64,000 nucleotides of DNA from Isurus oxyrinchus (Eukaryota). Positions 7,046-34,379 of the stretch are shown piece by piece. The DNA is taken from assembly GCA_026770705.1 (NCBI GenBank), contig JANJGN010000007.1, positions 109,616,001-109,680,000 on the forward strand, written 5' to 3'. Within the stretch, counting starts at the first letter, position 1, and the number at the start of each line of letters is the position of its first letter. The translations under genes and the position numbers were made by a program. The notes under the pieces are model-generated. The model searched no databases and was not told where the DNA came from. It saw only the letters and a program-made list of their open reading frames with translations.

Positions 7046-7251
7046 TCAGGCACACGTGGCATCTCTGTCTCTCTTACGGTGCTCCTTGTGCTTTGGTGCA
7101 GTTTCGTTAACTTTTTCTACTCTGCCTGGATTCCTCTGAGATAGCATCTGAATGTTGTCTTTTTTTACTCCTTGTTCCTTGCATTTGGGATTTTGTGTTA
7201 TTGGCTCAGAGCAGCGAACACATTGCTTCATTCGAATGTTGTTTCCATGAG
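7046..7251 (-). CDS. Gene A exon 5: cytoplasmic tail (AHGNNIRMKQCVRCSEP...RDATCA*)
   Basis: Acceptor GTTTTTCTTACAG| is phase-1 compatible. Open hydrophilic frame to TGA at 7048-7046 in non-repeat DNA; the homologous acceptor is kept in copy B. Small intervening exons cannot be excluded. Confidence 0.7.
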
Positions 7252-7399
7252 CTGTAAGAAAAACAGCATGGAATATAAGGTACAGAAGATGGCGGAACAC
7301 CTCAGATACGTCAGCAACTTTATTGCCTGGATTGGTACTTTGAACCATGTTGACCAGAGAATTTTGTGTTTGTCAAATTTTTGAATGAATCAATTTTCT

Positions 7400-7575
7400 A
7401 AGAAGTTACACATTTATGTAACAATATTCATAACATCTCTGATCACTCCACAAGTATATTTTGAAATGTAGTCGCCATTGTATCATAAGAAACAATCAAT
7501 TTTCCAACAGCATTGCCTATGGACAGCAATGAGATAATTACCAGTTTATCTGTTTTAGTGATGTTAGCTGAAGCT
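7400..7575 (-). mobile_element. SacSINE1/DeuSINE-like fragment (paralog ~44205-44380)
   Basis: TTTGAAATGTAGTC...ACAGCAATGAGATAAT...ATCTGTTTTAGTGATGTT matches the SINE at 17130-17410. Confidence 0.5.
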
Positions 7576-7839
7576 TAAGTCTCCTTCTGGTTAACTATGG
7601 TACAACATGTGGTAACTAATTTGTTATAAAGCCCTAAACAAGTGACTCAATCCTTCTAATGAAGAATAACTGACACAGAATATGAAATTGAAATGGTGTT
7701 GCAGGAGAGATGCTGTAAAACCACAATAGTCTGAAAGCATATTGTGGACCAGAAAATCTAGCCAATGTGCACCTTAAGCTACAAACCAGATATCAACACT
7801 TCAGGCTTCAAAAGGGAGAAACATTTTTATTTTACATTC

Positions 7840-8610
7840 AGATGTAGGCTGATAAATGGCAAGTAACATTGATGCCGCACAAATGCCAGGCAATGACCAT
7901 CCCCAGTAAGAGAAAATATAACCAAATCCCATTCTACAGCATTAGCAGTGTTGAATGCCCTCCCATCAACATCCTGGAGGTTACCATTGACCAGAAATTG
8001 AACTAGACCTGCCCTATAAATACTATGGCTATAAGAGCAGGTCAGAAGCTGGCAAATTTGTGGCAAGTAACTCACCTCCTGACTCCGCAAGGCCTGTTCA
8101 CCATTTACAAGGCACATATCATGAATAAAATGGAATACTTTTCCCTTGCCTGGATGACTGCAGCTCCATTTTTGCTCAGGAACTTAATATCATCCAGGAA
8201 AAAGAAGTCCACTTGATTGGTTCCCATCCACCACCTTAAACATTCACTTCCTCCAGCATTGATACACATTGGCAGCAATGTGTACCATTTACAATATGTA
8301 CTGCAGAAACTCAACAACACCTCCCAAACCCACAACTTCTATAAGCCTATCAGGACAAGGGCAGCAGAGACATGAGAACATCATTACCTGAAAGTTCCCC
8401 TGCAAGCTACACACCATCCTGAACTAAATTGCTGTTGCTTCGTTGTCGTTGGGTCAAGATCCTGGAACTCCTTTCCTATCAGCACAGTGCATGTACCTAC
8501 ATCAAATGGACTGCAGTGGTTCAAGAAGGCAGCTCACCACCACCTCTCAGACAGACAACAAATGCTGCCCTTGCCAGTGGTGCCCACATCCCATAAAAGG
8601 ATAAAAAATT
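7840..8610 (+). mobile_element. CR1/HER1-like LINE 3' fragment (paralog 44650-45415)
   Basis: HKCQAMTI...DQKLNW...YKAHI...EYFSLAWM and the same 3' tail as 236-1520. Confidence 0.8.
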
Positions 8611-10664
8611 AACCTTTTGTATATTTAAAATAACCTATTATTTATAAGTTTGTATTATTTGCTTCTAACGTATCGTTAAGGTTTCTATAAATATGAATTG
8701 AGGCCAATGTGGTTACTTCTCCTGAGGTTCTCCACTACCAGAACTACTTTTGGTTGATGGTAAAAGTTCGCCAAGTGATGGCTAGTTTGGTTATTTGATA
8801 GCTTCCTGAAATGGCAGATGGTGGACAGACCTCAGTGAGCAGGCTGATGTGACGTGTTCCATGCTCCGTGATGCATGGCCACAATTGTACTTATGTCACC
8901 CCTCCTAGTCCACTTTCAGAGCTGGTAACTGTATCATCCATGACCAGTGCAAATTCAATTGAGCCCTGAGGGACATCAATACCAGGGGCATCTTGATGAC
9001 AATTGAAATGTGGTCTCCCTGTGTGGGTTAGTTCATTGAGAACTTGCCAGCTAATGTCATCAAGATGACAAATGAGAGTGGCCTCCCAGTTTGTAAAGCA
9101 TGAAAGCATCAAATATGTTCTCTCACTCATCCACTGTAACTTCAGCAGAAGAGCAGCACGGACCCAGGAACAACTTTGTAAATGGCTTCTCACTAGTGTT
9201 TCCATGGTATTGCAGTGGAAACTTCAGCTACACGTGGGAGAAAACTTTCCCCCACCCGAAACTTATTATGGTAGTGATTGCTTAAGACTTTAACAGTATA
9301 CTGCTGAAATATAATAGAATATTAATCCTTCTGACTGAGAAATACAGGTAAGAACATAACATCCAGCAACCTTCATAACACTAAAAAGAAATTTTGGAAG
9401 TTGCAATAGAGTCAGAAGAAAAATTAAATGTAAAAAGAGCTCTCGAATACTGAATCAGCACTTCCTAATTAAGTTGAGACTTTTGAGCTATGGGCCAAAG
9501 GCACATGGAGCATATGTTGTTTGTGAGTTGAACTGATGTTGGCTGAAAATGAATTTACAGCTGCAATGACTGACAAACTTGGGATTTGGTTTCCGTTTGT
9601 GCTCTCTTCAGAGAAATGCTCACATAAAGCGATTCTTGTTTCATATTTTCAATGAATGCAAATAATGATTTATTACTATATTCAGAGTAGGCAGACTTCA
9701 TTACAAATTGGGGAAACTAAGTTACAGACCAAGACTCCGTGTAGAATACAACTAAAGCTGAAGAGAACAAAAGGGAAAAAAAATCTGATTCAGGGAGTCA
9801 TAATTAGTCAATGTCAAACTTGGCTGTGAAATCCCTGTCGATTTTTAGAGGAAGTGAAGACCATCAGAGATAGGGAGTTTCACAATTAGTCATTGAGACG
9901 GTGCCATGAATCTTCATTTTAACAAAGTGAGGTTACAGGGAGGAGGTACAGTGTGTATGATGACTTATTTTGAACTTAGAAAAAACAAGAGAGGAAATTC
10001 AATAGATAAATGACCATTGTAGTATCTTCAAAATAAAGATAGATAAGAAAATGTAGAGAGAAGTTGGAGACAAGAAGGAAAATAAGGATACACTAACGGA
10101 TAAGATTGGTCATAAGAGACCCTCTTTCGATATAGCAGAATTTAAATCTTGGAAATAATTGAAAGAAAGTATTCAGTCTTAAAGCGAATATCAATCTTCC
10201 TGGAGGCAAAATTTAGTGGTGAAATAATGTTGATAACTAATTCAGTGGGTGAAGGTCTAATTATTGACAAAACAGATGAGGTTAGACTTGTTGCATAATT
10301 TGCAAACAACATAAAAAAACTGTTTCTAAACAGTTGAAAACAACCATTTCTTTGTTGTTCTGAATGCCCTGTTGTAAACTAATTGGCATAATTATTCACA
10401 AGAAACTATGTAGAGTCAAACAGGTCTAGAAAGGACAGTAATGGTGGGAGAGGAAAATTATATGTAAGGGGTGGAAACAATGAATAAGCAACAAAAATTC
10501 AGAACATCTTGAAATAGTCCAAAAGCCATTTCAGACACTTAGCAATCTTTGCCAAGGCTGTAGGGAAAGGGAATTTAAAAACAGACTGTAAAAAAAGTGA
10601 AAGGGAACCCTAGGTCTATGTAAGCCTGCAGAATAATGGTGGGAAAACAAATGCACAACATCAT

Positions 10665-11375: not shown

Positions 11376-12039
11376 TTCTACTGTCTGATGTTAGTGTAAC
11401 TTGTGGTGATGCTGCTTGAGATACTGAAGAGGTAGTTGCCCTCTGTACCACTCTTTGGTACCATTTTTCCATAGACTAGCATTGCAAACAGCTCCGCAAA
11501 GAGGTTCAGCCAAGTTTTGAGAAACAACTGACTATTATTATCCTTGTGTGCTGCTGTTTGGCGCTGAATGTATTTGTAGATGATGGTACAGCTCTGCATC
11601 TGCCTGTTGGCCAAGACCTTAAAAACATTGGCTCACATAATCATTGCCAGGTATGTGTATCAGGGCGTGCTGAAAGGTTAGTAGCAATTTGGCGAGTTTG
11701 GCCAATGCTAAGTCGTGATCAGCCTGCTAGTCACTATCAACATCCTGGAAGTTACTACTGACCAGAAACTGAATTGGACGAGCCATAAAAATACTGTGGT
11801 TACAACAGCAGGTCAGAGATTGGGAATCCTGTGGTGAATAACTGACCTCCTGTCTCCCCATAGTCCGTCCATCATCTACAAGACACAAGTCAGGACTATG
11901 ATGGAATACCCTCCACTTGCCTGGAGAAGTATAGAGATAAAAACAAAAAACTGTGGATGCTGGAAATCCAAAACAAAAACAAACACAGAATTACCTGGAA
12001 AAACTCAGCAGGTCTGGCAGCATCGGCGGAGAAGAAAAG

Positions 12040-12078
12040 AGTTGACGTTTTGAGTCCTCATGACCCTTCGACAGAACT
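12040..12078 (-). ncRNA. Hammerhead-ribozyme-like motif in the left arm (GAAA mutated to AAAA)
   Basis: Reverse complement reads AGTT-CTGTCGA-A-GGGTC-ATGAG-GACTC-AAAA-CGTC-AACT. Confidence 0.55.
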
Positions 12079-13800
12079 TGAGTTCGAGTCCAAGAAAGAG
12101 TTGAAATATAAGCTGTTTTAAGTTGTGTGTGTGGGGGGCGGAGAGAGAGAGAGAGAGAGAGAGAGAGGTGGAGTGGGGGTGTGGTTGTAGGGACAAACAA
12201 GCAGTGATAGAAGCAGATCATCAAAAGATGTCAACAACAATAATACAAAAGAACACATAGGTGTTAAAGTTAAAGTTGGTGATATTATCTAAACGAATGT
12301 GCTAATTAAGAATGGATGGTAGGGCACTCAAGGCATAGCTCTAGTGGGGGTGGGCAGAGCATAAAAGATATAAAAAAAATAAAAAAAATAAATATTTTTT
12401 TTTTCTTTTTCTCTTTTTATAATGGAAATAGGTGGGAAAAGAAAAATCTATATAATTTATTGGAAGAAAAAGAGAAAAGGAAGGGGGAAACAGAAAGGGG
12501 GTGGGGATGGGAGAGGGAGCTCACAACCTAAAGTTGTTGAATTCAATATTCAGTCCGGATGGCTGTAAAGTGCCTAGTCGGAAGATGAGGTGTTGTTCCT
12601 CCAGTTTGCGTTGGGCTTCACTGGAACAACGCAGCAAGCCAAGGACAGACATGTGGGCAAGAGAGCAGGGTGGAGTGTTAAAATGGCAAGCGACAGGGAG
12701 GTTTGGGTCATTCTTGCGGACAGACCGCAGGTGTTCTGCAAAGCGGTCGCCCAGTTTACGTCTGGTCTCTGCAATGTAGAGGAGACCACATTGGGAGCAA
12801 CGAATGCAGTAGACTAAGTTGGGGGAAGTGCAAGTGAAATGCTGCTTCACTTGAAAGGAGTGTTTGTGTCCTTGGACGGTGAGGAGAGAGGAAGAGAAGG
12901 GGCAGGTATTGCATCTTTTGCGTGGGCATGGGGTGGTGCCATAGGAGGGGGTTGAGGAGTAGGGAGTGATGGAGGAGATGGAGGACACCCTGGTCCAGTC
13001 CTCCATCACCCCCTACTCCTCAACCCCCTCCTATGGCACCACCCCATGCCCATGCAAAAGATGCAATACCTGCCCCTTCACTTCCTCTCTCCTCACTGTC
13101 CAAGGACCCAAACACTCCTTTCAAGTGAAGCAGAATTTCACTTGCATTTCCCCCAACTTAGTCTACTGCATTCGTTGCTCCCAATGTGGTGTCCTCTACA
13201 TTGGAGAGACCAAACGTAAACTGGGCGACCGCTTTGCAGAACACCTGCGGTCTGTCCGCAAGAATGACCCAAACCTCCCTGTCGCTTGCCATTTTAACAC
13301 TCCACCCTGCTCTCTTGCCCACATGTCTGTCCTTGGCTTGCTGCATTGTTCCAGTGAAGCCCAACGCAAACTGGAGGAACAACACCTCATCTTCCGACTA
13401 GGCACTTTACAGCCATCCGGACTGAATATTGAATTCAACAACTTTAGGTTGTGAGCTCCCTCCACCATCCCCACCCCCTTTCTGTTTCCCCCTTCCTTTT
13501 CTCTTTTTTTTCCAATAAATTATATAGATTTTCCTTTTCCCACCTATTTCCATTATAAAAAGAGAAAAAGAAAAAAAATATTTATTTTTTTTTTATTTTT
13601 TACATCTTTTATGCTCTCCCCACCCCCACTGGAGCTATACCTTGAGTGCCCTACCATCCATTCTTAATTAGCACATTCATTTAGATAATATCACCAACTT
13701 TAACTTTAACACCTATGTGTTCTTTTGTATTATTTTTGTTGACATCTTTTGATGATCTGCTTCTATCACTGCTTGTTTGGAACAACCACACCCCCACTCC

Positions 13801-13803
<3 letters not shown>

Positions 13804-13848
<45 letters not shown>
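13804..13848 (+). repeat. (CT)n microsatellite in the Penelope 3' region; shorter (GA)n mirror at ~12141-12167
   Basis: Direct reading of the sequence. Confidence 0.95.
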
Positions 13849-13851
<3 letters not shown>

Positions 13852-13909
13852 CCCCACACACACACCTTAAACCAGCTTATATTTCAACTCTTTCTTGGAC
13901 TCAAACTCA

Positions 13910-13948
13910 AGTTCTGTCGAAGGGTCATGAGGACTCGAAACGTCAACT
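13910..13948 (+). ncRNA. Minimal type I hammerhead-ribozyme-like motif in the Penelope pLTR
   Basis: Stem I AGTT/AACT, core CTGTCGA, stem II GGGTC/GACTC, GAAA, palindromic ACGT stem III, cleavage triplet GUC. Confidence 0.7.
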
Positions 13949-14239
13949 CTTTTCTTCTCCGCCGATGCTGCCAGACCTGCTGAGTTTTTCCAGGTAATTC
14001 TGTTTTTGTTTTTGTTCTGGAGAAGTATAGCTCCAACAATATTCAAGAAACTCAACACCATCCAGGACAATGCAATCTGCTTGATTGGCACCTCATCCAC
14101 CACATTCAACATTCCTTCCCTCCACCATCAACACACAGTGGTAGCAGGGTGTACCATCTACAAGATGCACTGCACAAACTCATCAAGGATCCTTCCGCAA
14201 CACCATCTAAACCTGTGACCTCTACCAGGTCACAGCTAA

Positions 14240-15545: not shown

Positions 15546-16044
15546 TTCTTAATTGGAGGCCTGTGGGTTGCTGGCTGCTCACCCCCTCACCATCACTTTC
15601 AAAATTGAGGCACAATCCTGAGGCATTGGAAGGTTGACACACCAGCTGGGAGTACCATTTTCAAAGTGCACCCACAACCAATATTGCTCCAATGGGCGAT
15701 TCAAAATCCAACCCTCTGAATTGTATCACATTACTGTAGAGAGACGGAGGAGCTTTATCTGGCTTTAAATATTCTATACCTAATCTGGAAGTTCTTAGTG
15801 CCTAGAAAGGAAGTGTTCCAATCTGCAAAATTAACATTGTTCACCTTGATGAACTCAAAAGTAAATTGCATAAAATATCATCTAAGAATTGAAGTAGAAT
15901 TTTTCATCCTAAAGTTTACTTATTGCAGATTAATAAATTAGTTCACATATCCTTTCAATCTGTTATCATTTCTATATTTGTATAATTGATGAATATTAAC
16001 TCACGAAGTCCAACCATTAATGTAGTGAGGTGGCTCCTCCTTAC

Positions 16045-16164
16045 CTTTAGATTTTTTGCAACAGCAGAATTTACAACAAAGTGCCAATGCAATAATTAGA
16101 AGCAGTAAAGCTATTGCTCCACAGAGGTAGATCCACCAAGGAAAAATGGGATTGGATTCATTTT
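16045..16164 (-). CDS. Gene A exon 4: stalk, transmembrane helix and Cys/Lys-rich juxtamembrane segment
   Basis: Acceptor GTCTTGCAG| and donor AAAG|GTAAGG; 120 nt, phase 1-1. WWIYLCGAIALLLLIIALAL followed by CCKFCCCKKSK. The same exon is conserved in copy B. Confidence 0.9.
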
Positions 16165-17129
16165 CTGCAAGACACATGCAAAACAAAAACATAGTCATTC
16201 ACTTTCAGAAGTACGTTAGCAGGTTCTTAGACCCCAGCTCTTTCTCATGGCTCTATATGGGTGATGTTATGAATGTACACTTCCTGCACAAATACAGAAT
16301 ACCAATCTTCACACCCAATATTCCAATTACTGCTCTTGGGCCATAAAAGATTTGAATCATGACTGTCAAACCCATAAACGTACACTTCATGAGGTGTAAT
16401 GAGTGTGAGAATGTCAAACTTGTTCCTGGTTGGTGTGGGCTAAATCTGTCCACGATTAAGTCCAGGTTAGGTTTTATCAATTAAACAAGGTTGGCTAATA
16501 GAAGTGAACAAATGGCATAGGTATAGTTGATGGTGCTCTCATAAAGATGATGTTAAAAGCATTTACTCTGCATCTTACGCATGTAGAGTTGAAGCCCAAG
16601 ATCAGCCATGATAACAATGAATGGTGGCACAGGCTCAATGGGCTGCATAGTCTACTACAGCTCCTATTTTGTGCGTTTTTGTGTTCTTAATTGGACTCAG
16701 AAGTGTTTGAAGCTCTAACAAAGAAAATATTCTTCTCCGCAGCATTTGCCTTGGTGTAGATCAAAATAAAGCTCCGCCAGACATAATTTTTAAAAATGAT
16801 ATGTCCAACATAAAGCAGCAATAAAAGATTTTTACACTGGGGGAAACACATTTGTAAAAATGCAGCAACAACTTCATAAATGTTTGTGAACACTTTTGCT
16901 CCTATTTCCAAAGAAATTATAAATATGCTGGTAAAGAACACAGTTTACTTAGAAATGCTGAAGAGAGTAGATCTTTAAACATGAATTTATTGCTTGAACT
17001 CTTGCTACAATATCTCAGTTTGCACATATTTCAAAAGTCAAATGTTGAATCTTTAACTCTTTATATAGAAATCACATGAATAATTAGGATAATTGGCATC
17101 CATTTGTTTCTGTCTATCCTGCTTAATGA

Positions 17130-17410
17130 AAGAACTTACGTTTACATAAATATGCGTCACACCCTTGGTCAATCCTGAAGTGCCTTACAACCAGCTTAGT
17201 ACATTTTAAAGTGTAGTTATCGTAATAATGTTGGAAACATGCAGCCAATTTGTGTACAGCAAGGTCCCACAAACACCAATGAAATAAATGACTGCTTCAT
17301 CTGTTTCAGTAACGTTAGTTGAGATAAATGATGGCCAGGACATTGAGAGATCTACCCTGCTCTTCTTTCAAAAGTGTCAAGGAATATTTCACGACCACCT
17401 GAGAGGACAG
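17130..17410 (-). mobile_element. SacSINE1/DeuSINE-like element (paralog 55680-55960)
   Basis: GCAGCCAATTTGTGTACAGCAAGGTCCCACAAAC...GGCCAGGACA...CCTGCTCTTCTT...CCACCTGAGAGG resembles the common shark SINE; recognised from memory. Confidence 0.6.
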
Positions 17411-17954
17411 ATTAAGTTGCCTGTCTCCTGTGGGTTAAATAATTGGTGACAGACAGTGTCTAAACTTACATGTTGATGAGGTACTGGGGATGTGGTAGAT
17501 GTCTGTCTGTTAGAAGAGGACGGAGGAGAAAGGCAGGAACAACATGAGGTTACTGCCAATGGGAATGCATTCTATCTTTTACTTATTAGGTTATCTGCTC
17601 TAAGACCCCTTTGTCCTACAAGAATTAGTGTGCATCAAACAGTGAAGCCGCTGGTCAGCAAGGTATCACTGCTTGCTCATGTCACTGAAATGTGAAAGGC
17701 AGAGTTCTGCAAACACTCTAAAACTTATGAAGGGCCATCAACCACTGATCTCCACTAACAAGTAACTTTCTGGCGACTTGAAAACAATTGGTGGGATAGT
17801 GAGACAACCGTGTTTCTTAGTTATTCTCACTCTAACTTTAATCTTTCATAATTACTATCCACAAATTGCCATGTTATTGCTGTATTGTAGCCCTCAGAAC
17901 ATATCATCTGAGATCTGTACTTCAATCATACAAAACGGCAGGCTGTGGCAATGA

Positions 17955-18100
17955 GCAATGGTAGTATAGTGGAGAAGCAACCCATAAGCATGGACTAATG
18001 ATCCAGACACAAGAGTTCAAAATACCACAACAGAAGCTGGAAAATTTAAATTCATTTAATTAATTAAATCTAGAATCAATGATGGTGACCATGTAACTCC
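17955..18100 (+). mobile_element. HE1-like SINE, 5' part only (truncated at ~18100)
   Basis: tRNA-like head (TGGTAGTATAGTGG...GGACTAATGATCCAGA...GAGTTCAAAATACCAC); the paralog at 56505-56890 is complete. Confidence 0.6.
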
Positions 18101-18258
18101 TGTGTTGACTTAAATTGTTAGTTTGGGGTTTTTTGCCCTTTTATGTCTTCTGTCTTTTCACTCATGTTCAGTCAAAAAGTCCCAAATTTAAATCATAATC
18201 TGTGTTAGGCTAGCCAGAGGGAGCAACTGTTGATGTGCTGCAAGTGGTCTTAATACTA

Positions 18259-19907
18259 ATATACTGGGACATGGGCCCCAGTTATGCCTGTCCCTTTATG
18301 GGGTATGTGGAACATTCCTTGTTCCAGTTCCTACTCTGGCCCCCTCCCATAACTCTTTCTCCGGTACATCAATGACTGCTTCGGTGCCGCTTCATGCTCT
18401 CTTCTGGATCTGGAAAAATTTATTAATTTTGTTTCTAATTTCCAGCCCCCCACCCCCCATCATTTTCATGTGGTCCATCACTGACATTTCCCTTCCCTTC
18501 CTTGACCTCAGTCTCAATTTCTGGTGATAGACTGTCCACCAATATTCATTACAAGCCTACCGACTCCCACTGCTATCTTGACTCACACCCCACTTCCTGT
18601 AAGGAGTCCATCCCATTCTTTCAGTTCCTTCGCCTCCGTTGCAACTGGTCTGATGATGCCACTTTCCAAAACAGTTCCTGTGAATGTCTTTCTTCTTCCT
18701 TAACTGAGGTTTTCCAACCATGGTGGTTGACAGGGCCCTCAACCGTGTCCAGCCCATCTTCTGAGCATCCGCCCTATCACCTTCCTCTCACTCCCAGAAC
18801 CATGATAGGGTCCCCCTCGTCTGCACTTATTATCCCACCAGTCTCCACGTTCAAAGGATCATCCTCTGCCATTTCCACCAACTCCAGCATGATTCCACTA
18901 CCAAATACATCTTCCCTTCACCCTCCGCTGGTGGCTTTCCACAGGGATCATTCCCTCCAGGATACCCTGGTCCACTCCTCCATCACCACCTACACCTCAA
19001 CCCCCTCCCACAGCACCTTCCCATGCAACCACAGAAGGTGCAACACCTGCCCCTTTACTTCCCCTTTCCTCACCGTCCAAGGGCCCAAACATTCCTTTCA
19101 AGTGAAGCAGCACTTCACTTGCACTTCCCTCAATTTAGTCTACTGCATTCGATGCTCCCAATGTGTTCTCCTCTACATTGGAGAGACCAAATGCAGACTG
19201 TCCAAGGGCATGACCCAGACCTCCCTGTCGCTTGCCATTTCAACACAGCACCCTGCTTTCATGCCCACATGTCCGTCCTTGGCTTGCTGCATTGTTCCAG
19301 TGAAGCTCAATGCAAACTGGAGGAACAGCACCTCATCTTCCGACTCGGCACTTTGCAGCCAAACTTAATATTGAGTTCAACAATTTCAGATCATGAACTC
19401 TCTCCTCCATCCCCACCCCCTTTCCGATCCCTCCCTTTTCCAATAATTTATAGTTTTTTTTAATTATAATTTTTTTGTTTTTTTATACACTATTTTTCCT
19501 TTTCCCTCCTATTTTTAAATTTATTTTGATCTATTGTTTCAGCTTCCACCTTTTAGCCCATTTTGATCCCTTCCCCCCACCCCACCCGCACTAGGGCCAT
19601 CTGCCACTAGCTTGTCCTGTTTGCTACCCTCACTGTCCCCATTAGCACACCTTTTAGATAATACCACCACCATCAACACTCCTTTGTCCTTTTGTCTATG
19701 ACATCTTTGGCAGTCTCTTCTTGGCTTCCACCTATCACTGGCCCTCTGTCGAGTTCTCCTGTCCCACCCCCTTCTTCTAACTTATATTTCATCTCATTTC
19801 TGTATGTCTTAGTTCTGATGAAGGGTCATCCAAACTCGAAAGGTCAACTGTGTCCCTCTCCACAGATACTGACAGACCTGCTGAGTTTTTCCAGGTATTT
19901 TTGTTTT
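18259..19907 (+). mobile_element. Older 5'-truncated Penelope-like retroelement (RT C-terminus, GIY-YIG, pLTR), frameshifted
   Basis: MGPSYAC...RYIND (YIDD-like), LPFLD...HYKPTD, NLVYCIRC...LYIGETK; 14-bp TSD TGGTCTTAATACTA at 18245-18258 and 19908-19921. Confidence 0.92.
19811..19849 (+). ncRNA. Hammerhead-ribozyme-like motif with canonical CUGAUGA core, decayed stems
   Basis: AGTT-CTGATGA-AGGGTCATCCAAACTC-GAAA-GGTC-AACT. Confidence 0.6.
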
Positions 19908-20350
19908 TGGTCTTAATACTAGTCTTCTAAGGAGAATAAAAGAACAGATCAGCCAAAATGCCTAATTGATTTCCATTAACAATTACATGTGTACGTGCAT
20001 GTGGGCATGCATATGTGTCCTGATCACACATGAAGAACAAGCAATTAAGTGAGGTACTATGAGATTACGTCAGCAAGGCTCAAGGCACTGAGGAAAGGAA
20101 CAGAGAGAACAAAGGAAAACATTGCATAAAATTAAGTTTTAAAAGTTGTGTAAAATCATATCACTGAGCTCAGCAGATGCAGCTGATGGACTGTGTGAGT
20201 CTGAACCAGCTCCACCGAGTTCACAATAACTGAAAAATCACCAGCACTGCACTTACTGCCTTCCTGGCATCACCGTGAAAATATTTCCTACCAATAGCAG
20301 TGAAACCACAATATACAATGTTTTCACAATTAAATAGGTTTTGTTCCTAC

Positions 20351-20647
20351 CTGCAAAGCGAACAGTGTAATTGACCCAAGTTGGAACCTTGAGAGTCGAG
20401 TGATATACCTCACAGATAAAAACAGTCCCACTCTGAGGAGGCTGTGGCTCTTCCAAATAACTGGAAGCTTCATATAGTCCCTTAGCATTCTTCTCGCTGG
20501 ATGTCTTGACTCCAGCTGTAACTTTTTGACCATCTTTATGCCAAACAATGGTGACATCAGCAGGATAGAACTCAGATGTTTTACACAAACACGTTAGAGA
20601 GCCATTTGCAGAAAAGTTTGGCAAAATCGTCAGAGGATGTGGAGAAG
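20351..20647 (-). CDS. Gene A exon 3: C1-set Ig domain
   Basis: Acceptor TTTATCTCTAG| and donor GCAG|GTAGGA; 297 nt, phase 1-1. C1 hallmarks: CxxxxFYPxxVxIxW, GLYEASSYL and F-x-C-x-V-x-H (FICEVYH). Confidence 0.93.
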
Positions 20648-20722
20648 CTAGAGATAAATTAAAAAACAACAAATTTCTGAATTTCCAAGTTGGATACGAT
20701 ATACTGATATATTCCTCTTGGA

Positions 20723-20904
20723 CAAAAACAGAATTACCTAGAAAAACTCAGCAGGTCTGACAGCATCGGCGGAGAAAAAAAGAGTTGACATTTCGAGTCC
20801 TCATGACCCTTCGACAGAACTGTCGGATGCTGTCAGACCTGCTGAGTTTTTCCAGGTAATTCTGTTTTTGTTTTGGATTTCCAGCATCCGCAGTTTTTTG
20901 TTTT
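20723..20904. mobile_element. Mini Penelope-like insertion with a 13-bp TSD, ~75 nt upstream of the C1 exon acceptor
   Basis: Inverted pLTR ends; TSD TATTCCTCTTGGA at 20710-20722 and 20905-20917; hammerhead motif on the minus strand at ~20783-20821. Confidence 0.88.
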
Positions 20905-22024
20905 TATTCCTCTTGGATATCATTTCACAATATTGCAGTTGTGCTTTACCTATGAGTATTAACTGTTCCGTAGTTCATCGAAACTGCATTCTGGCTGTCA
21001 ATTATGTTGCATCAATTTTCAGAGCTGGGCAACTGAGAACAAGCAAAAATGAGAGACATGGCGTGTTCACAACACATTGCCATGCAATAACACTGCATAC
21101 AAAAATGTAGGTTATCCAAGAATTTATTCGATGAATATGTTGTTTGTTGGTTCAATCTCTGGTCTGCTCTGGATTAACCAGTCTCATTTATGCATAATTA
21201 AAATTTGGCTCAGCATCCCAGAGCTAGGTAGAGAAAATTAAATCAGCCCATGTTTCAAATTGCTACCTAACAGTGCCTGTGGAAATGTCACGTGAGAACA
21301 TCAGTCCAGGCTACAATTGGGTTTAATTGCAATGTTTCATGAAACTCATTGCCCAGGCTAACACATTGGATATTTAAGCAAAATTGCTGTTCAACAGATA
21401 AAAGAGAGGGAGCTGAATGATAATGGTAAATGATGTAAACTACTTGTGTACAATGTGACATTTCACTTTGCTAAATTTGTAAAAAAAAAATGCAGAGCTT
21501 TGGGGAAAGGGCAGGGGAGCAGGAGTTGCTCTTGCAGAGAGCTGGCACAGACACAAAGGGCTGAATGGCATCCTTTTGTGCGACAACCATTTTATGATTC
21601 TATTCTGTTGCTATAAATTTGTATTAGCTAGGATCAAGAAAAATTTTAACCTAATTATGACTTTTTTCCAGAATACTGTTTCAACAAGAATAATAATTGC
21701 CAATTTTAATAGAAGACTCAGCACCACAATCTACAGCACAGAACAGATAATTCGACCAAGCTAGTCTATGCTGGTGTTTATACACCAAACAATCCACTTC
21801 CCATGCTACCTAATATCTCTCTATTCCCTTCTTCATTTGTTCATCAAGTCTTCCTTAAAAGGTGACGATGCAATCTTCTTTAAACACTAATAGATTTAGC
21901 TCTTACACGGTTGTGGGGGAGGAAAATTGCTGGTTACTCTGCATAGCAACAGTTTAAGTGCATTCATGTGGGTCAATTTAATATAAATACGTTAAATCAT
22001 TTACACATTATTGCACAGTACAGC

Positions 22025-24205: not shown

Positions 24206-24924
24206 GAGCTAAGAAAAAGCAAGGTGCAGAAACATTGTTAGGAGTTATTTGTAGGCTACCTAGCTTTAGTTGTGGTGTAGGGCAGATTATAAATCAGGAA
24301 ATTCGACATGCATAAAATAAAGATAATACAGTAGTCAGCAGGACAGTAATCTTCATTTAGGCTGTACAGACCAAATTGGCAGTAACAGTGTGGAAGGGGA
24401 AAAGTTCATGGAATGTATAGAAGATAGTTGTATAAGTCAGTATGGTAAGGAACCAGCTAGGGAACAGGCAATTTTGGATTTAACATTGTGCAATGAGAAG
24501 GAGTTGATTAATAGACTTGTAGGGACCTTTGGGGAAGAGTGGCCATAAAATAATAGAATTTTATATTGAGTTTGAAAATGATTTAGTTAAGATTGAAACT
24601 AGGCTCTTAAATTTTAAAATAAACTATGTGGATGAAGATAAATTGGGAAACTACATTAAAATGATGACAGTGGACAAGCAATGTCTAGCACTTCAAGAAT
24701 TGCGACATGGTTTGCATCAACTATAAATTCCTTTAAGACACAAAAAAATCCACTGAAAAAGTGGTTCAACCATGGTTAATCACAGGAGCTATGGAAAAGA
24801 AATGGTCAAGGAAGAAATTTACAATGTTGGAAATGAGCAGTAAGCCTGAGTATTATGAAGAGTATTAATATTCAGAAAAGGAGGGCCAAGAAATTGATAA
24901 GGAGAGAGAAAAGAGACTAAAAAA

Positions 24925-26155: not shown

Positions 26156-29027
26156 AATTCATAAAAACCGATTGTGGTTTTTTTCTATATATATGTAAAT
26201 TGAAAGAGATTACTGAAAGTAAATGCGGGTCCATATGAGGCAGAGAAAATTGAAATTATAATGGGGAATAAGGAAGTGACAGAGACATTAAACATATTTT
26301 GTATCTGCCTTCACGGTGGGAAGAAATATTCTGCAAATTATGAGCTACCAAATGTCTAGCAAAATTGAGGAACTTGAAAATCAGTATGAGTAGAAAAATA
26401 GTACTGGAGAAATTAATGGGGCTAAGGTGACAAATCCCTGAACCTGATAACCTGCATCCTGGGTTTTAAAGGAGGGAGCTGCAAGTGATAATGGATGAAT
26501 TTTTGATCTTCCAGAATTCCTTAGATTTGAAAACAATTCCAAAGGAGTGGAAGGTAGCAAGCATAAACCCAACTATTTAATAAATGAGAAAGAGATAAAG
26601 CTGCGAACAATGAACCAGTTATTCTAACATCAGTAGCAGGCAGAATGGAGAATCTATTGTTTGGGGCATGGTAACAGGGCACTTAGAAAATCATAATATG
26701 ATTAAGCAGAGTCAACGTGGATTTAGGAAAGGAAACTTATGTTTAACGAATCTGTTAAGGGTTTCTGAGAATGTGACTAGAAAGATGGATAAAGGCTAGA
26801 TAGTGTATTTGGATTTTCGAAAAGCATTCAATAAGGTGCTGCACAAGGGGTTATTAAACAAAATTAGGATTCATAGGATTTGTGATAATATATTAGCATG
26901 GATGGAGAGAAAACAAAAAAGTAGGGCATTTTTAGTTTGACAGGCTGCAGTTAGCAGGGTGCCACAAGGATCAATATTTAGATCTCAGCTACTTACAATC
27001 TATATCGGCAACTTAGATAAGGGGAGTGAGTGCAATGTAGTCAAACTTGCTTATGGTACAAAGTTAGATGGAGAAGTAAACCACGAGGAGAATGCAAAGA
27101 GGCTGCAGAGAAACATAGACAAGTTGGGTGAGTGGACAAGAGCAAGGCAGATGAAACAATATGGTGAAGGTGAAGTTGCCCACTTTGGTTAAAAAAAATA
27201 GAAAAGCAGAATATTTTTTGAATGGTGAGAGGCTGGGAAGATGTTTCATTTCAGAGGGACCTGGGTGTTCTTGTACAAGAATCACAAAGTTAACATGCTG
27301 GTACAGCAAGCAATTAGGAAGGCCAATGATGTGTTAAGTTTTGTGGCAAAGGGATTAGAGTATAAAAGTAAAATTAGTCTCACTACAATTATACAGGGCA
27401 TTGGCGAGACCACACCTGGAGCAGCATGTGCAGTTTTGCTGTCGGTACTTAAAGAAGGACATACTTGCCCTAGAGGGAGTGCAACAGGGGCTCAGAAGAA
27501 GATGAGGGAATTGTCCTATGAGGAGAGGCCGAGTAGACTTGCCCAATGTTTCCTAGAGTTTAGAAGAATGTGAGTTGATCTAATTGAAACCTGTAAAATA
27601 TTTTAAAAGAGGCTTGATGGGATAGAGAGTGTTTCCCCTGCCTGGGGAATCTAGAACAAGGGGTGACAGTTTCAAAATAAAGGTCGAGCATTTAAGACTG
27701 AAATGGAGCGAAATTTCTTCACTCACAGGATTGTGAATCTGGAATTATCTACCCCACAGGGCGGTGGTTGATTGTATTGATGCAGGGATCAATAGATTTT
27801 TGAATACCTGGGGAATTAAGGGATATTGCAACAGGGATGAAAGGGGTATTGGGACAGGGATGGAAGGGATATAAGGATAGTGCGTGAAGGCCGAGTTGGC
27901 TAAAATGTCAGTCAAGATCTAGCTGAATGGCGGAGCAGGCTGGAAGGGTCAAATGTCCTTCCTCAGGTCATATTTCTTACTTTCTTTTCTTAGGTTCTTA
28001 ACATCGACTAGATAAGCCAGACGGTCCACTTTCCCGGTATATCTATGCTATAAATAATTTGCGTTCAGCAATATGATGCAATAATTAAACAATAGCTTGG
28101 TGCTGTGGGTAAAAGGCGAATCGCTGGATGAAACTGAAATTGTCATTCTTTACCTTTCCTGTTTTGTCATAAGGTTCAAAATATCTGGAATGTTGAAGAA
28201 AACGACTAGATAAAAGTCGTTGCACTCTGCATTTACAACGGCAGGTGCGTGAAGGGCCAGCTAACTTCAGGCTAGTGACAGCATTTTTAAAATACACCAA
28301 ACATCCTAATTTTTATTAGAATTCAGAAATACTGTTTGTTAGCTAAGGTCATAAATTATAGGGCACAATGTGCACCACAAATTAAATCCCAAGGCTAACC
28401 ATTGATTCAAACGACGATTAAAGATTCGCCTCAGACTCAGACCTTGAATTTTCTTACCCAGTTATTAGTTGGCTCAACTATTTATTCGTGCGCATCAAGG
28501 TTGAAGTGAATGGTTGTGATTAAACCCACTGAATTGTCTGTTAACAGCTTGGCAAGAACATACATTTGATACAAAGTTGAAATAAGTTTTTAACATTTAA
28601 ATACTTTTACTTTATAGGGATAGAAGAGTTTGTTATGTAGATTTGGGATTAATCTTTTGGGTATTTCACTTAGACCAGAGGAAGAGCCGGCGGGCCAGAT
28701 GCGGCAGACACTCTCTCCATAGGGAGACGGGTCCTGTTGAAGATCGCTCCTGAAATAACAGCCGCAGCACTAAAACGCCTTCTAATAACTTCATTTAGGG
28801 ACGTATTTCGCTCGTGTAATCCCGGAATTTCGGTATTTGCTAACCTGATTTTTGTGTGTAGCCCGTGAGTTAAAACAAAATGATCAGTTAATACAGGATA
28901 CAAACAAAATACTGCGGATGCTGTAAATCTAAAACAAAAACAGAAAATGATGGAAAAACTGAAGTCTAGCAGCATCTGTGGAGAAAGTTGCAGTTTGTTG
29001 TAATAATTCTCAACAATACTTTAGGGC

Positions 29028-29243
29028 AAAAACAGAATTACCTGGAAAAACTCAGCAGGTCTGGCAGCATCGGCGGAGAAGAAAAGAGTTGACGTTTCGA
29101 GTCCTCATGACCCTTTGACAGAACTTGAGTTCGAGTCCAAGAAAGAGTTTTCTTCTCCGCCGATACTGCCAAACCTGCTGAGTTTTTCCAGGTAATTCTG
29201 TTTTTGTTTTGGATTTCCAGCATCCGCAGTTTTTTTTGTTTTT
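29028..29243. mobile_element. Mini Penelope-like insertion with TSD ACTTTAGGGC
   Basis: Inverted pLTR ends; TSD at 29018-29027 and 29246-29255; minus-strand hammerhead remnant. An older Penelope end lies next to it at ~28900-28990. Confidence 0.85.
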
Positions 29244-30699
29244 ACACTTTAGGGCGACTGGGAGTGATTTTGGCAATAATGCTAAACGAATGATATCAAT
29301 GGGAATAAAACATTGGAGAGATGGGCTTGTCGATTCGCTATCAACCCTCTTCGTTCAGTAATGTACCTCTGACTACATAGAGGGTAATTTAATTTTGGCC
29401 TGTTGTTTAAAATGCCTTTGATACTCCTAGTCGGAGCATACTTAAACAAATTAAGCAAAGGCAGAAGACCTGCGGATACATTAAATTGCAGACTGTATCA
29501 ATTACAGGTGGCGGTAATACTTTCATGTTTGATTTACAACACCGTCTGATGCTCAAGAGTCGAGCAATAACTAGAGTCGGCGGAATGCCACAATGCGGTT
29601 ATAATCCTCTATCTTTAAAATCTCTCTGATCCGAGTGAAATTGCATTCTGAGTTTGGGAGAATTGACGAACTGGAACAATTGGTTCAAAATAACATCGTT
29701 GACGACCATTTCGCTCCAGATTCCCAATCAAAAAAATCTCCACTCGTGTCTAACGCCGACCGTAAGAGACAGATCCTACACAACATCCTTTAACGTGAAA
29801 CATTCTTCACACTCCAGTGGACAAGTTTCCATGTTATTCGGATCTGTTTCTGTTCAGTTCCGCGGAAATACCTCCAATGTATCCTGGAGAAGAACTTTGA
29901 AATTCTCAGTATTCTTCTGATGAAGAGACATTCGATTTAATCATTAACTCTGTTTCTTTCACCACAGACACTACCAAACTGGCTGAATATTTCTAGCACC
30001 TTCTGTTATTATTATATAAAAAAGATTCCGTCCTGCAGCCGCCCAGCAAATACCTTAGCCCAGGTTTATGCTTCTGTGTTGCCAAGCCCTCGATTTTCAT
30101 TTCAGAAAACCCCGACTAACTTTTTGAAGGGAGTAATAATGAAAGATTTTAAAAAGTGCGTTAAAAGTAGCGGATTTTGTTCTAAACGTAAAGGACTCAA
30201 GACTGGAGGGTTAATTAGCGATTTCACCGGACGCGAGGCGATAGATAATTGCAAGCGCTTGTTATATTTCTCAACCACGTCTTGTAACTGTTAGAAAAGA
30301 TTGTGAAGTATATATTTTAAAATGAATGTCACTTTCTGCAGAAAATGATTTCGAAATAGCAGTTAAAGCACGTCTCACGGAAACCCCAGAACCCAACAGA
30401 CAAATGCCGAGGTATGAGTCGATTTGCGCAATACTCAGCATTTTATTTTTTTGTTCTGAGCTTTCACTAACAAAAGCGCTGACCTTCTGTGGCCAAATTC
30501 TGCCAGCTTCAAACCACAGTCATAATGGCCGGCTGTGCATTGTAAATGTACCATAAGGAAGGATCACAAATGAGAAATTAATGACAGTTTTATCCATCCC
30601 AGCCGTTCCTCACCCCATCCCTCTGTCCTATATCACTGGACCCTATTATTTGTAAATGTAACTGCTATATTTTCCACTTCGCTGTGAATGATTACTCAC

Positions 30700-31005
30700 C
30701 GCTTACATCCAGCTGTGTGCCGGTCCCATTTCCAGTAAATTCTCCTTCCACTCTGCAATAATAGACTCCAGCGTCTCCAAAACGCACCTTCTGGAGGCGC
30801 AGAATGGCGCTCGCTTTGCTCTCAACCCTGAAGCTTCTCCTGGGATCGTGCTGCGAGTTTAAGAATTCCTGTTCGCCACCTTTCCACCAGCGCACTACAA
30901 TTTTATACTTATCTCTGAACAGCGGGAACGAGCAGTGAAAAGTCACCGTCTGTCCTGTGGTTGCATTTTTCTTAGGAGGTAATTGTACCACATTGCCGGC
31001 GACTA
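30700..31005 (-). CDS. Gene A exon 2: V-set Ig domain with germline-encoded J-like G strand
   Basis: Polypyrimidine tract plus TGCAG acceptor and AGCG|GTGAGT donor. B-strand Cys (TVTFHC), C-strand Trp (VRWWK), DxGxYYC motif, and GxGTxLxV motif (GTGTQLDV). Confidence 0.93.
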
Positions 31006-31273
31006 CTGCAAAAAACAAAAACACAAAACATGTATTTCTGGGAGGAAGAGGGCGAGTGGAATACCTCTGGAAGGAAACGGGACAAAAATAATTGAATTCG
31101 ATATATCTCCTTTCTTGAATATAGAGCGACCAGAAGAAACTCTATAAGGAACAATATAAAACTACTTCCGCTCTAACTTGCGATGCAATTTGACACATAT
31201 ACACTCTAATTATTCCCATCAGCTTAATTTACAGCCTTTTCGATGTAGGGGTTGTTAAACTGAAGACACGTAC

Positions 31274-31328
31274 CTGTGCAAGAAAGGGCCAGGATGAGTA
31301 TGGGCTGAAGGTGGGTTCTTCCAGACAT
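31274..31328 (-). CDS. Gene A exon 1: signal peptide (MSGRTHLQPILILALSCT)
   Basis: ATG at 31328-31326, hydrophobic core ILILAL, donor ACAG|GTACGT in phase 1. Joins the V exon to give ...SCTVVAG|NVVQ, a plausible signal-peptidase site. Confidence 0.8.
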
Positions 31329-31369
31329 ACTGACATTTGGAACTGAGTACCGGCTGAGCACCAGACCCT

Positions 31370-34375: not shown

Positions 34376-34379
34376 TAAT

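What the first reader, a model, noticed from the sequence alone, without database searches (positions are those of the whole stretch)
7046..31328. Non-rearranging, germline-joined VJ-C1 antigen-receptor-like gene in a shark-like genome
A single exon encodes a full V domain including a J-like G strand (YYCRVEGEFTGNGTGTQLDVS; compare human NKp30 YVCRVEVLGLGVGTGNGTRLVVE, quoted from memory). It is followed by a true C1-set domain, a fold largely restricted to Ig, TCR, MHC, tapasin, SIRP and B7-H6. VJ+C1+TM without RSSs is the architecture proposed for the pre-RAG antigen-receptor ancestor and is described for PRARP/VJ-C1-type genes and shark UrIg. This protein differs from TCR and NKp30 in having no charged TM residue, and from inhibitory SIRPs in having no cytoplasmic Tyr. 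It may represent a distinct, tandemly expanded receptor family. Family assignment and novelty are inferences.
Basis: partly seen in the sequence, partly recalled or inferred. Interest (0 to 1): 0.9.

Follow-up and report, generated by a model that had tools for sequence, protein, structure and literature searches.

The report
Conserved shark VJ-C1 membrane receptor gene
This shark DNA holds a real, expressed gene for a membrane protein shaped like one antibody light chain or T-cell-receptor chain but fixed in the germline; all cartilaginous fishes checked have it, gene catalogues list it under misleading names, and I found no paper describing it.

Summary
A five-exon minus-strand gene (31328 to 7046) encodes a 327-aa protein: leader, one-exon V domain with a J-like GNGTGTQLDV strand, one true C1-set domain, an uncharged TM segment, and a 67-aa tyrosine-free tail. 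All junctions are GT..AG and phase 1. RNA-type contigs from three public runs join the C1 and TM exons exactly as predicted.

The same five-exon model already exists as a great white shark RefSeq protein ("immunoglobulin lambda-1 light chain-like", 94-100% identical exon by exon). One-to-one orthologues occur in at least 13 sharks, rays and a chimaera. Their names are contradictory: Ig lambda-, tapasin-, B7-H6-, SIRP-alpha-, CD276- and butyrophilin-like.

The gene is one conserved lineage inside a large VJ-C1 receptor family found only in cartilaginous fishes. Many paralogues carry ITIM/ITSM tails or a TM arginine. This scan noted related clusters earlier on other pieces of the genome.

It fails the defining features of NKp30, UrIg, UrIg2, SIRP and rearranging Ig/TCR.

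The second tandem copy lacks the C1 exon and has a stopped tail. Function is unknown. Interest is moderate.

The parts
31274..31328 (-). Exon 1: start codon and 18 residues of a split signal peptide (MSGRTHLQPILILALSCT), ending in phase 1 with a GT donor.
   Evidence: Sequence read. It is 94% identical to residues 1-18 of RefSeq protein P0161. RNA-type runs hold 0.36-0.43 of the sampled words of 30650-31400, about the exonic share of 0.48.
30700..31005 (-). Exon 2: the end of the leader plus a complete V domain with a germline-joined J-like G strand (YYCRVEGEFTGNGTGTQLDVS). Phase 1 at both ends.
   Evidence: Pfam V-set E 3.8e-10. 99% identical to P0161 residues 20-120. The GNGTG..L.V motif is invariant in 12 orthologues. 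The AF2 model has pLDDT above 95 here.
20351..20647 (-). Exon 3: a C1-set constant domain (FYPADVTIVW ... CEVYH).
   Evidence: Pfam C1-set E 4.6e-13. The best PDB domain match is Ig lambda C at 40 bits, followed by UrIg2 C1 at 28 bits. Structural matches to MHC II, Ig CL, IgNAR C and TCR C have rmsd 1.2-2.0 A. RNA contigs cover it and end at its predicted borders.
16045..16164 (-). Exon 4: a short stalk, an uncharged TM helix with the conserved PWWIYxC motif, and a juxtamembrane cysteine cluster (CCKFCCCKK).
   Evidence: The joint 16164->20351 is seen in runs X1, X6 and X7. W229, W230, Y232 and C234 are invariant in orthologues. The AF2 model puts a helix at 229-260.
7046..7251 (-). Exon 5: a 67-aa basic cytoplasmic tail without Tyr, with a conserved CxRC motif and a KKHRK-type end. 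Stop codon at 7046-7048.
   Evidence: 98.5% identical to P0161 residues 261-327, and 34-68% identical in the other orthologues. C270, R272, C273, N300 and H317 are invariant. No Pfam family matches. Its join to exon 4 is inferred: contigs run on 951-993 nt past 16045.
18102..21613 (.). A 3.5-kb block that carries the C1 exon, present in copy A but missing from the tandem copy B. It also holds Penelope-like repeat copies.
   Evidence: Self-BLAST. The C1 exon has no second match in the window. Very high repeat depth at 18.2-19.9 kb.
54580..54699 (-). Copy B TM exon. It is intact and differs from copy A at 9 of its 120 bases (6 replacement and 3 silent changes).
   Evidence: A 257-nt RNA-type contig with 10 mismatches to copy A may come from it (record 18).
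43852..44057 (-). Copy B tail exon, with an in-frame TGA after six codons (44038-44040) and a second stop further on. It encodes a truncated tail or belongs to a pseudogene.
   Evidence: Alignment A1.

Best explanation
This is an intact, transcribed, non-rearranging immunoglobulin-superfamily gene. It encodes a type I membrane glycoprotein with one VJ-type variable domain, one C1-set constant domain, an uncharged TM helix and a tyrosine-free basic tail.

It is the lamniform orthologue of a single conserved gene lineage present in sharks, rays and chimaeras. That lineage sits inside a large VJ-C1 receptor family seen only in cartilaginous fishes, whose other members look like classical inhibitory/activating paired receptors (ITIM/ITSM tails, or a short tail with a TM arginine).

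Inferred, not shown:
- Its V loops, TM motif and tail are conserved over roughly 400 million years (established knowledge of the shark-chimaera split), while its paralogues diversify. So it most likely binds a conserved self partner rather than varied pathogens.
- It probably sits in membrane rafts through palmitoylation of its juxtamembrane cysteine cluster.
- It probably signals or is regulated through partners recruited by the conserved PWWIYxC TM motif and the CxRC/polybasic tail, not through tyrosine motifs of its own.
- A TM-exon-skipping isoform annotated in five species suggests a secreted form as well.
For: - Gene structure and domains.
- Splicing: RNA-type contigs of 1.7-1.8 kb join the C1 and TM exons at the predicted bases in three runs from three studies. 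These runs leave most intron bins uncovered apart from repeats.
- Existing model: an identical five-exon model exists as Carcharodon RefSeq protein P0161, with exon-wise identity of 94-100%.
- Orthologues: they are present in 13 or more species including Callorhinchus. Their alignment shows an invariant GNGTG, FPL in the BC loop, WW.Y.C in the TM segment, C.RC and KKH.
- Tree: the elasmobranch orthologues form a clade with 98% SH-aLRT support whose branching order broadly follows the accepted phylogeny. The nearest paralogues are P0017 and P0202, which have Tyr-bearing tails.
- Paralogue tails and TM segments.
- Taxonomic range: all 30 profile hits at E<=1e-8 are chondrichthyan.
- Isoforms: 285-aa X2 isoforms lacking the TM exon are annotated in Hemiscyllium, Chiloscyllium, Heterodontus, Heptranchias and Callorhinchus.
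- Structure: the AF2 model shows two confident Ig domains and a TM helix.
Against: - No functional datum exists. The ligand, cell type, oligomeric state and signalling are all unknown.
- The runs are only guessed to be RNA.
- The V-C1 and TM-tail joins were not seen directly.
- The restriction to cartilaginous fishes rests on searches with limited reach. The word index used is one limit, and only the best 150 hits were seen.
- The homodimer test gave no answer.
- Palmitoylation, raft targeting and a role for CxRC are inferred from motifs alone.
- The X2 isoforms are automatic gene models.
Confidence: 0.6

Rival explanations
1. It is the cartilaginous-fish counterpart of B7-H6 (NCR3LG1). On this reading it is a V-C1 ligand displayed on cells and read by NKp30-type receptors, not a receptor itself.
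For: - RefSeq names six orthologues or near relatives 'NCR3 ligand 1-like'.
- Human B7-H6 scores 78 bits against the orthologue profile, from the end of V through C1 and the stalk.
- It is the best two-domain structural match: Z 15.3, 192 residues aligned, 26% identity.
- The tail lacks ITIM/ITAM motifs and the TM segment lacks charge, as in B7-type ligands.
Against: - UrIg2 (91 bits), Ig heavy chains (80-100 bits) and SIRP-alpha (80 bits, aligned over V plus C1) score the same or better.
- The Z values of the best 50 structural rows differ by under 2.
- The closest paralogues carry tyrosine tails, and others carry a TM arginine, which is typical of receptors.
- The V domain has the GxG J-type strand.
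- No tree with B7H6 references could be built.
Confidence: 0.12
2. It is a third surviving lineage, beside UrIg and UrIg2, of the non-rearranging VJ-C1 precursor of Ig and TCR. It keeps the one-V, one-C1, TM layout of a single receptor chain.
For: - The architecture is VJ + C1 + TM with a split leader.
- The C1 domain is closest to Ig lambda C, and UrIg2 C1 follows.
- UrIg2 is the best non-antibody hit of the orthologue profile.
- Foldseek's best matches are Ig light chains at 22-30% identity over both domains.
- The gene is present in chimaeras as well as elasmobranchs.
Against: - The similarity to antigen receptors is no greater than to SIRP-alpha or B7-H6.
- V-only profile hits are generic: Robo, titin, pIgR, CD79b.
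- The family could equally be a SIRP-like innate receptor family.
Confidence: 0.15
3. It is one chain of a dimeric receptor that pairs through its C1 domain and TM motif with itself or with another VJ-C1 chain. The partner supplies the signalling motifs.
For: - C1 domains of Ig, TCR and MHC are normally paired (established knowledge).
- UrIg and UrIg2 are homodimers (PMC12227049).
- The TM motif PWWIYxC, including a cysteine near the outer leaflet, is conserved in orthologues and in the tyrosine-tailed paralogue P0017.
Against: - The homodimer prediction gave no answer, with a score of 0.00.
- The stalk has no conserved cysteine.
- The C1 domains of SIRP and B7-H6 are unpaired.
- The predicted V-C1 arrangement resembles extended B7/SIRP-type ectodomains.
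- No head-to-head partner gene lies in the window.
Confidence: 0.1
4. It is a germline-joined immunoglobulin light-chain cluster, or a mis-joined gene model.
For: RefSeq calls several orthologues 'immunoglobulin lambda-1 light chain-like'. The C1 exon's best match is Ig lambda C. Germline-joined IgL clusters do exist in sharks (established knowledge).
Against: - The C1 exon is spliced to a TM exon in RNA contigs.
- The V domain is not IgL-like.
- The TM segment and tail are conserved in orthologues down to the chimaera.
- The V-C intron is 10 kb.
Confidence: 0.02

Closest known systems
SIRP family (SIRP-alpha, -beta, -gamma)
   Same: It has a non-rearranging VJ-type V domain followed by C1-set domains, a TM segment and paired-receptor logic in the wider family. 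Paralogues carry ITIM/ITSM tails, or a short tail with a TM arginine. SIRP-alpha aligns over both V and C1 at 80 bits. SIRP-gamma gives Z 13.8 with 23% identity. Like SIRP-gamma, this gene has neither an ITIM nor a TM charge.
   Different: It has one C1 domain, not two. Its 67-aa conserved tail with CxRC and a polybasic end, its PWWIYxC TM motif and its juxtamembrane cysteine cluster are not SIRP features. No orthology is shown. The close relatives found are all from cartilaginous fishes.
UrIg and UrIg2 (shark non-rearranging antibody-like genes; PMC12227049, PDB 9dmx)
   Same: It has a single-exon VJ domain with a split leader, C1-type domains, no rearrangement, and occurs in cartilaginous fishes. 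UrIg2 is the best non-antibody sequence match of the orthologue profile at 91 bits.
   Different: UrIg has three C1 domains and is only secreted. UrIg2 has 9-11 C domains. This gene has a single C1 domain, a TM segment and a distinct tail. It is also present in a chimaera, whereas UrIg and UrIg2 are reported from elasmobranchs only. Identity to UrIg2 is about 25%.
B7-H6 / NCR3LG1
   Same: The layout is V + C1-type C domain + TM + a tail without ITIM/ITAM motifs. It is among the best two-domain structural matches (Z 15.3, 26% identity) and is the source of several RefSeq names.
   Different: This V domain is of the VJ type, with a GNGTG bulge motif. The gene's family includes receptor-type paralogues with tyrosine tails or charged TM segments. 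The scores are not better than those to Ig, UrIg2 or SIRP.
NKp30 / NCR3
   Same: It has a germline VJ-type V domain with a glycosylated GNGT in the G strand. The V-only isoform of the sawfish orthologue is named NCR3-like by RefSeq.
   Different: NKp30 has no C domain and has a TM arginine. This gene has a C1 domain and an uncharged TM segment. Similarity to NKp30 is weak: E about 4e-4, and it is not in the best 60 of the V profile search.
PRARP (Fu et al. 2019, J Immunol 202:1992; cited in PMC10751288 and PMC11599192)
   Same: It is a non-rearranging IgSF gene with a joined VJ domain, proposed as a remnant of an antigen-receptor precursor. Earlier notes of this scan suggested PRARP for related clusters in this genome.
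   Different: No bony-vertebrate V-C1 relative appeared among the close hits. The window shows a same-strand tandem duplicate, not a gene pair.
Ig light chains and TCR chains
   Same: It has a two-domain VJ-C1 ectodomain. Foldseek's best matches are lambda and kappa light chains at 22-30% identity. The C1 domain is closest to C-lambda. For TCR chains, a TM segment follows the C domain, as here.
   Different: V and J are joined in the germline with no RSS. There is no charged TM residue. The gene has its own conserved 67-aa tail, and orthologues are single genes rather than V/J/C clusters.

Membership tests
Rearranging antigen receptors (Ig/TCR) | Separate V and J (and D) segments flanked by RSS, joined somatically. 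| tested here: not met
   V and J-like strands lie in one exon from YYC to the splice donor. No RSS-like site lies between them, and the window has 10 weak sites against 5.75 expected from shuffles.
Rearranging antigen receptors (Ig/TCR) | A V domain followed by a C1-set domain. | tested here: met
   Pfam V-set E 3.8e-10 and C1-set E 4.6e-13. The best Foldseek matches are Ig light chains.
NKp30 / NCR3 | A single VJ-type V domain with no C domain. | tested here: not met
   A C1 exon is present and is spliced to the TM exon in RNA contigs.
NKp30 / NCR3 | A positively charged TM residue for CD3-zeta/FcR-gamma association (mammalian NKp30; from established knowledge). | tested here: not met
   The TM segment PIFPWWIYLCGAIALLLLIIALALCC has no charged residue, and the same holds in all orthologues.
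NKp30 / NCR3 | Specific sequence kinship of the V domain. | tested here: inconclusive
   Human NKp30 matches at E about 4e-4 over the whole V domain but is not in the best 60 of the V profile search. The nurse shark NCR3 family sequences (MT914154-61) and the paper describing them (PMC8273117) were not available.
UrIg | VJ + three C1 domains, secreted only, with no TM segment (PMC12227049). | tested here: not met
   The gene has one C1 exon and one TM exon, and no further Ig-like exon was found in the introns.
UrIg2 | VJ + nine to eleven C domains + TM (PMC12227049). | tested here: not met
   There is a single C1 domain. UrIg2 scores 91 bits against the profile, with about 25% identity.
SIRP | VJ-type V + two C1 domains. 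| tested here: not met
   Only one C1 domain is present, in this gene and in its orthologues of 318-327 aa.
SIRP | ITIMs (SIRP-alpha) or a TM lysine (SIRP-beta). | tested here: not met
   This gene has no Tyr in the tail and no TM charge. Paralogues do have ITIM/ITSM tails or a TM Arg.
B7-H6 / NCR3LG1 | V + C1-type C domain + TM, orthologous to vertebrate NCR3LG1. | tested here: inconclusive
   The architecture fits. The scores (78 bits, Z 15.3, 26% identity) are no better than those for Ig, UrIg2 or SIRP. No reference sequences were at hand for a tree.
PRARP | Non-rearranging VJ-joined IgSF genes of bony vertebrates (Fu et al. 2019). Further features are known to me only from memory. | not testable with these tools
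   The paper and sequences are not held. Close hits are all chondrichthyan.
Chondrichthyan VJ-C1 receptor family (unnamed; RefSeq 'SIRP-alpha-like', 'tapasin-related-like' and similar) | A shared V (WWK, GNGTG.L.V) and a related C1 domain (33-47% identity), forming one tree with this gene. | tested here: met
   In the 75-row tree, the orthologue clade has 98% SH-aLRT support inside a clade with 96% support that also holds P0017 and P0202.

The most novel reading that the evidence does not exclude
This conserved single-C1, membrane-bound VJ-C1 gene is an independent relic of the pre-RAG antigen-receptor precursor, a third lineage beside UrIg and UrIg2. It would be the only one that keeps the one-V, one-C1, TM layout of a TCR-like chain, and the only one retained in chimaeras as well as elasmobranchs. 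That would make the ancestral chain architecture, and possibly its ligand and partner, open to experiment.
Probability: 0.15. Interest if true: 0.8.

Novelty: new member of a known kind. Interest (0 to 1): 0.5.

Why it matters
Non-rearranging VJ-C1 genes are the closest living stand-ins for the gene that the RAG transposon split to create antibodies and T-cell receptors. The two shark examples studied so far, UrIg and UrIg2, are multi-C-domain, antibody-like proteins.

This gene is simpler: one V, one C1 and a membrane anchor. It has been conserved one-to-one for roughly 400 million years, including in chimaeras, and it is expressed. It sits next to a fast-evolving set of inhibitory and activating paralogues. 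Comparing the two could show how a germline receptor family splits into a conserved self-recognition member and diversifying immune receptors.

There is a practical point too. Public annotation gives this one gene at least six unrelated names, which will mislead comparative immunogenomics.

Tried and rejected
- **Joined model:** Exons were searched one by one by reference. The natural RefSeq protein P0161 (94-100% identical exon by exon) served as a proxy for whole-protein work.
- **Region search:** The search for homologous proteins with the C1 region of P0161 found only 5 candidates and was uninformative.
- **Profile search:** the search with 34 family members returned only chondrichthyan proteins. 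The word index limits its reach, so the absence of bony-vertebrate kin is weak evidence.
- **Homodimer test:** Complex prediction with the P0161 ectodomain, residues 20-224, in two copies gave 'no answer' with a score of 0.00. This is no evidence either way.
- **Papers not held:** Kinlein 2021 (PMC8273117), Flajnik 2012 (PMC3709836), Ohta 2019 (PMC6761025), Flajnik 2023 (PMC10530332), Ohta and Flajnik 2015 (PMC4594805) and Fu 2019. I therefore cannot exclude that this family was described there as shark NCR3, B7H6 or PRARP.
- **Atlas search:** it gave only generic V-C1 clusters.
- **NKp30-specific kinship:** considered and rejected.
- **IgL cluster reading:** considered and rejected.


Full report
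**Observation**

The window has no N runs. Five exons lie on the minus strand, with ends read directly from the sequence:

| Exon | Coordinates | Length |
|---|---|---|
| Leader | 31328-31274 | 55 nt |
| V | 31005-30700 | 306 nt |
| C1 | 20647-20351 | 297 nt |
| TM | 16164-16045 | 120 nt |
| Tail (with TGA stop) | 7251-7046 | 206 nt |

- Each intron starts GT and ends AG, and every junction is phase 1.
- Pfam scores the V exon as V-set (E 3.8e-10) and the next exon as C1-set (E 4.6e-13, 49.8 bits against a cut-off of 21).
- The V exon reads without interruption from YYCRVEGEFTGNGTGTQLDVS into the donor site, so the J-like strand is germline-joined.
- A scan for heptamer-spacer-nonamer sites found 10 weak matches in the window against 5.75 in shuffles. 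None separates V from J.
- The TM segment has no charged residue and the 67-aa tail has no tyrosine.
- No Pfam family matches the tail.

**Expression and splicing**

- A word search with the leader-V stretch found runs guessed to be RNA. They hold 0.36-0.43 of the sampled words, close to the exonic share of that stretch.
- I laid four of these runs on 16000-20750.
- Contigs of 1794 nt (X6) and 1734 nt (X7), and a 681-nt contig (X1), carry the joint 16164->20351. The skipped DNA ends in CT..AC on the plus strand, which is GT..AG on the gene's strand.
- The laid pieces end exactly at 16045 and at 20648. The extra base at 20648 also fits the last base of the V exon.
- The X6 contig runs on 425 nt beyond the C1 exon, which equals 306 + 55 + 64. 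It also runs on 951 nt beyond the TM exon.
- These lengths fit the V, leader and tail exons plus UTRs. That last step is inference, because those exons lay outside the stretch.
- Intron bins free of repeats have little or no depth in these runs, so they behave as RNA.

**The gene is already in public catalogues**

- A full HMMER search with the V exon and a word-index search with its best hit led to P0161, a 327-aa great white shark RefSeq protein named "immunoglobulin lambda-1 light chain-like".
- The window's five exon translations match it in order: 94% (leader), 99% (V), 100% (C1), 97% (TM) and 98.5% (tail).
- Orthologues of 318-327 aa with the same layout occur in Scyliorhinus (two species), Mustelus, Heterodontus, Hemiscyllium, Chiloscyllium (two species), Stegostoma, Heptranchias, Pristiophorus, Pristis, Hemitrygon, Hypanus, Mobula, Narcine and Callorhinchus.
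- RefSeq names them variously:
  - Ig lambda-1 light chain-like
  - tapasin-related protein-like
  - NCR3 ligand 1-like
  - SIRP-alpha-like
  - CD276 homolog
  - butyrophilin-like 10
- In the alignment of 12 orthologues, these positions are invariant:
  - the two V cysteines, WW after strand C, DxGVYYCRV and GNGTG..L.V
  - the C1 hallmarks C..YP..W and C.V.H
  - WW.Y.C in the TM segment
  - C.RC and a histidine of the KKHRK-type end in the tail
- 285-aa X2 isoforms that lack exactly the TM exon are annotated in five species.

**Place in a larger family**

- About 75 distinct V-C1 ectodomains among the hits share the WWK and GNGTG(S/T).L.V motifs and a C1 domain 33-47% identical to this one.
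- All those whose source I could look up are from cartilaginous fishes. All 30 profile hits at E<=1e-8 are too.
- In a maximum-likelihood tree, the elasmobranch orthologues form a clade with 98% SH-aLRT support. Its branching order broadly follows the accepted phylogeny: rays, then Heptranchias, Pristiophorus, Heterodontus, lamniform plus carcharhiniforms, and orectolobiforms.
- A clade with 96% support adds the chimaera orthologue and the paralogues P0017 and P0202, which share the PWWIY TM motif but have tyrosine-bearing tails.
- The other 52 rows form several clusters. Many have ITIM plus ITSM tails (for example LTYAAL ... TEYAQL), and some have short tails and an arginine in the TM segment. 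This is the pattern of paired inhibitory and activating receptors.
- In at least nine species, the orthologue and such paralogues sit on a contig of the same length, which I take to be the same chromosome.
- In Callorhinchus the locus numbers are consecutive (LOC103185890 to 103185897).
- Earlier notes of this scan describe related VJ-C1 clusters on other pieces of this genome.

**Comparison with known families**

- With the single C1 exon, the best PDB domain matches are Ig lambda C (40 bits) and UrIg2 C1 (28 bits).
- With the orthologue profile, the scores fall in one band:

| PDB match | Score | Profile region aligned |
|---|---|---|
| UrIg2 | 91 bits | end of V through C1 |
| SIRP-alpha | 80 bits | V and C1 |
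| B7-H6 | 78 bits | end of V, C1 and stalk |
| Antibody chains | about 75-100 bits | mostly from the second half of V through C1 |

- A V-only profile finds multi-Ig adhesion proteins first, then pIgR, CD79b, VNAR and TCR. NKp30 is not in the best 60. With the single V exon, NKp30 reaches only E about 4e-4.
- An AlphaFold2 model of P0161 built with the family alignment has pLDDT above 95 for both Ig domains, a TM helix and a disordered tail.
- Foldseek's best matches are lambda and kappa light chains at 22-30% identity.
- In the wide structural search, the C1 domain superposes on MHC II, Ig CL, IgNAR C, CH3 and TCR C domains at 1.2-2.0 A.
- The best two-domain matches are B7-H6, PD-L2, B7-H3, PD-L1, butyrophilin, SIRP-gamma and UrIg2. 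All lie within 2 Z units of each other.
- The fold assignment (V plus true C1) is therefore firm, but no known family stands out.
- By their defining features the gene is not any of these:
  - a rearranging receptor
  - NKp30, which has no C domain and a charged TM segment
  - UrIg, which has three C1 domains and is secreted
  - UrIg2, which has 9-11 C domains (PMC12227049)
  - a SIRP, which has two C1 domains
- B7H6, the shark NCR3 family and PRARP could not be tested.

**How it probably works**

Shown:
- It is an expressed type I membrane protein with a VJ-C1 ectodomain.
- It has several N-glycosylation sequons, including the invariant GNGT.
- It has an uncharged TM segment with a conserved aromatic-cysteine motif.
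- It has a juxtamembrane cysteine cluster.
- It has a conserved basic tail without tyrosines.

Inferred:
- The strong conservation of the BC loop (FPLFRD), the FG loop, the TM motif and the tail contrasts with diversifying paralogues. This points to recognition of a conserved self partner, and to signalling or regulation through associated proteins.
- The cysteine cluster suggests palmitoylation.
- The CxRC motif and polybasic end are candidate contact sites.
- A secreted form may arise by skipping the TM exon.
- Whether the chain pairs through its C1 domain is open. The homodimer prediction gave no answer.

**The duplicate**

- The window holds a tandem segmental duplication: 2250-28709 matches 39245-63960 at about 86-92% identity.
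- Copy B keeps the TM exon (54580-54699), with six replacement and three silent changes.
- Copy B lacks the 3.5-kb block with the C1 exon. Its tail exon has TGA after six codons and a second stop.
- All orthologues have the C1 domain, so copy B lost it. Its V exon would lie beyond the window.
- 'Tandemly expanded' is therefore true of the wider family, but here it means one intact gene and one decaying copy.

**Verdict**

It is a conserved, apparently unstudied member of a non-rearranging VJ-C1 receptor family of cartilaginous fishes. It is already present in gene catalogues under misleading names. The link to the pre-RAG ancestor remains an open hypothesis. Tools that were closed, or steps left out, are listed under Tried and rejected.

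Noticed in passing
window 39245-63960 (copy B; TM exon 54580-54699, tail exon 43852-44057): This is a tandem duplicate of the gene's 3' two-thirds. It has an intact TM exon, no C1 exon, and a tail exon stopped after six codons (TGA at 44038-44040). A 257-nt RNA-type contig with 10 mismatches to copy A's TM exon suggests that it, or a similar copy, is transcribed.
   Followed up: partly
window 16003-16044, and 54538-54579 in copy B: The reading frame stays open past the TM exon donor in both copies (GKEEPPHYINGWTS* and GKEEPDHYIYDWIS). If the intron were retained, this would give a short tail with a YxN motif. The RNA contigs seen use the donor at 16045, so no read-through was observed.
   Followed up: partly
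window 31334-31336 (minus strand): An upstream ATG lies 8 nt before the start codon, in another frame. Its 21-codon frame runs to the end of exon 1 and meets TAG at the first bases of the V exon. It is a possible overlapping upstream ORF.
   Followed up: no
window 11967-14021 and 18200-19950: Penelope-like retroelement copies with GIY-YIG-type ORFs lie in the introns, including a 2.1-kb inverted pair at 94% identity. They show very high depth in the RNA-type runs, so the element family is abundantly transcribed or abundant in those libraries.
   Followed up: no
window 31600-42800 and 1-5000: A GC-rich (53-59%) spacer lies between the two gene copies. It is made of low-complexity Pro/Gly-rich frames and fragments that look like decayed LINE-type reverse transcriptase. 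No intact gene was seen.
   Followed up: no
P0157, P0158, P0164, P0168, P0170 (orthologue isoforms in five species): These 285-aa models skip exactly the TM exon. They would attach the conserved 'cytoplasmic' tail to a secreted V-C1 protein. This recurs from chimaera to sharks, so it may be a real conserved isoform.
   Followed up: partly
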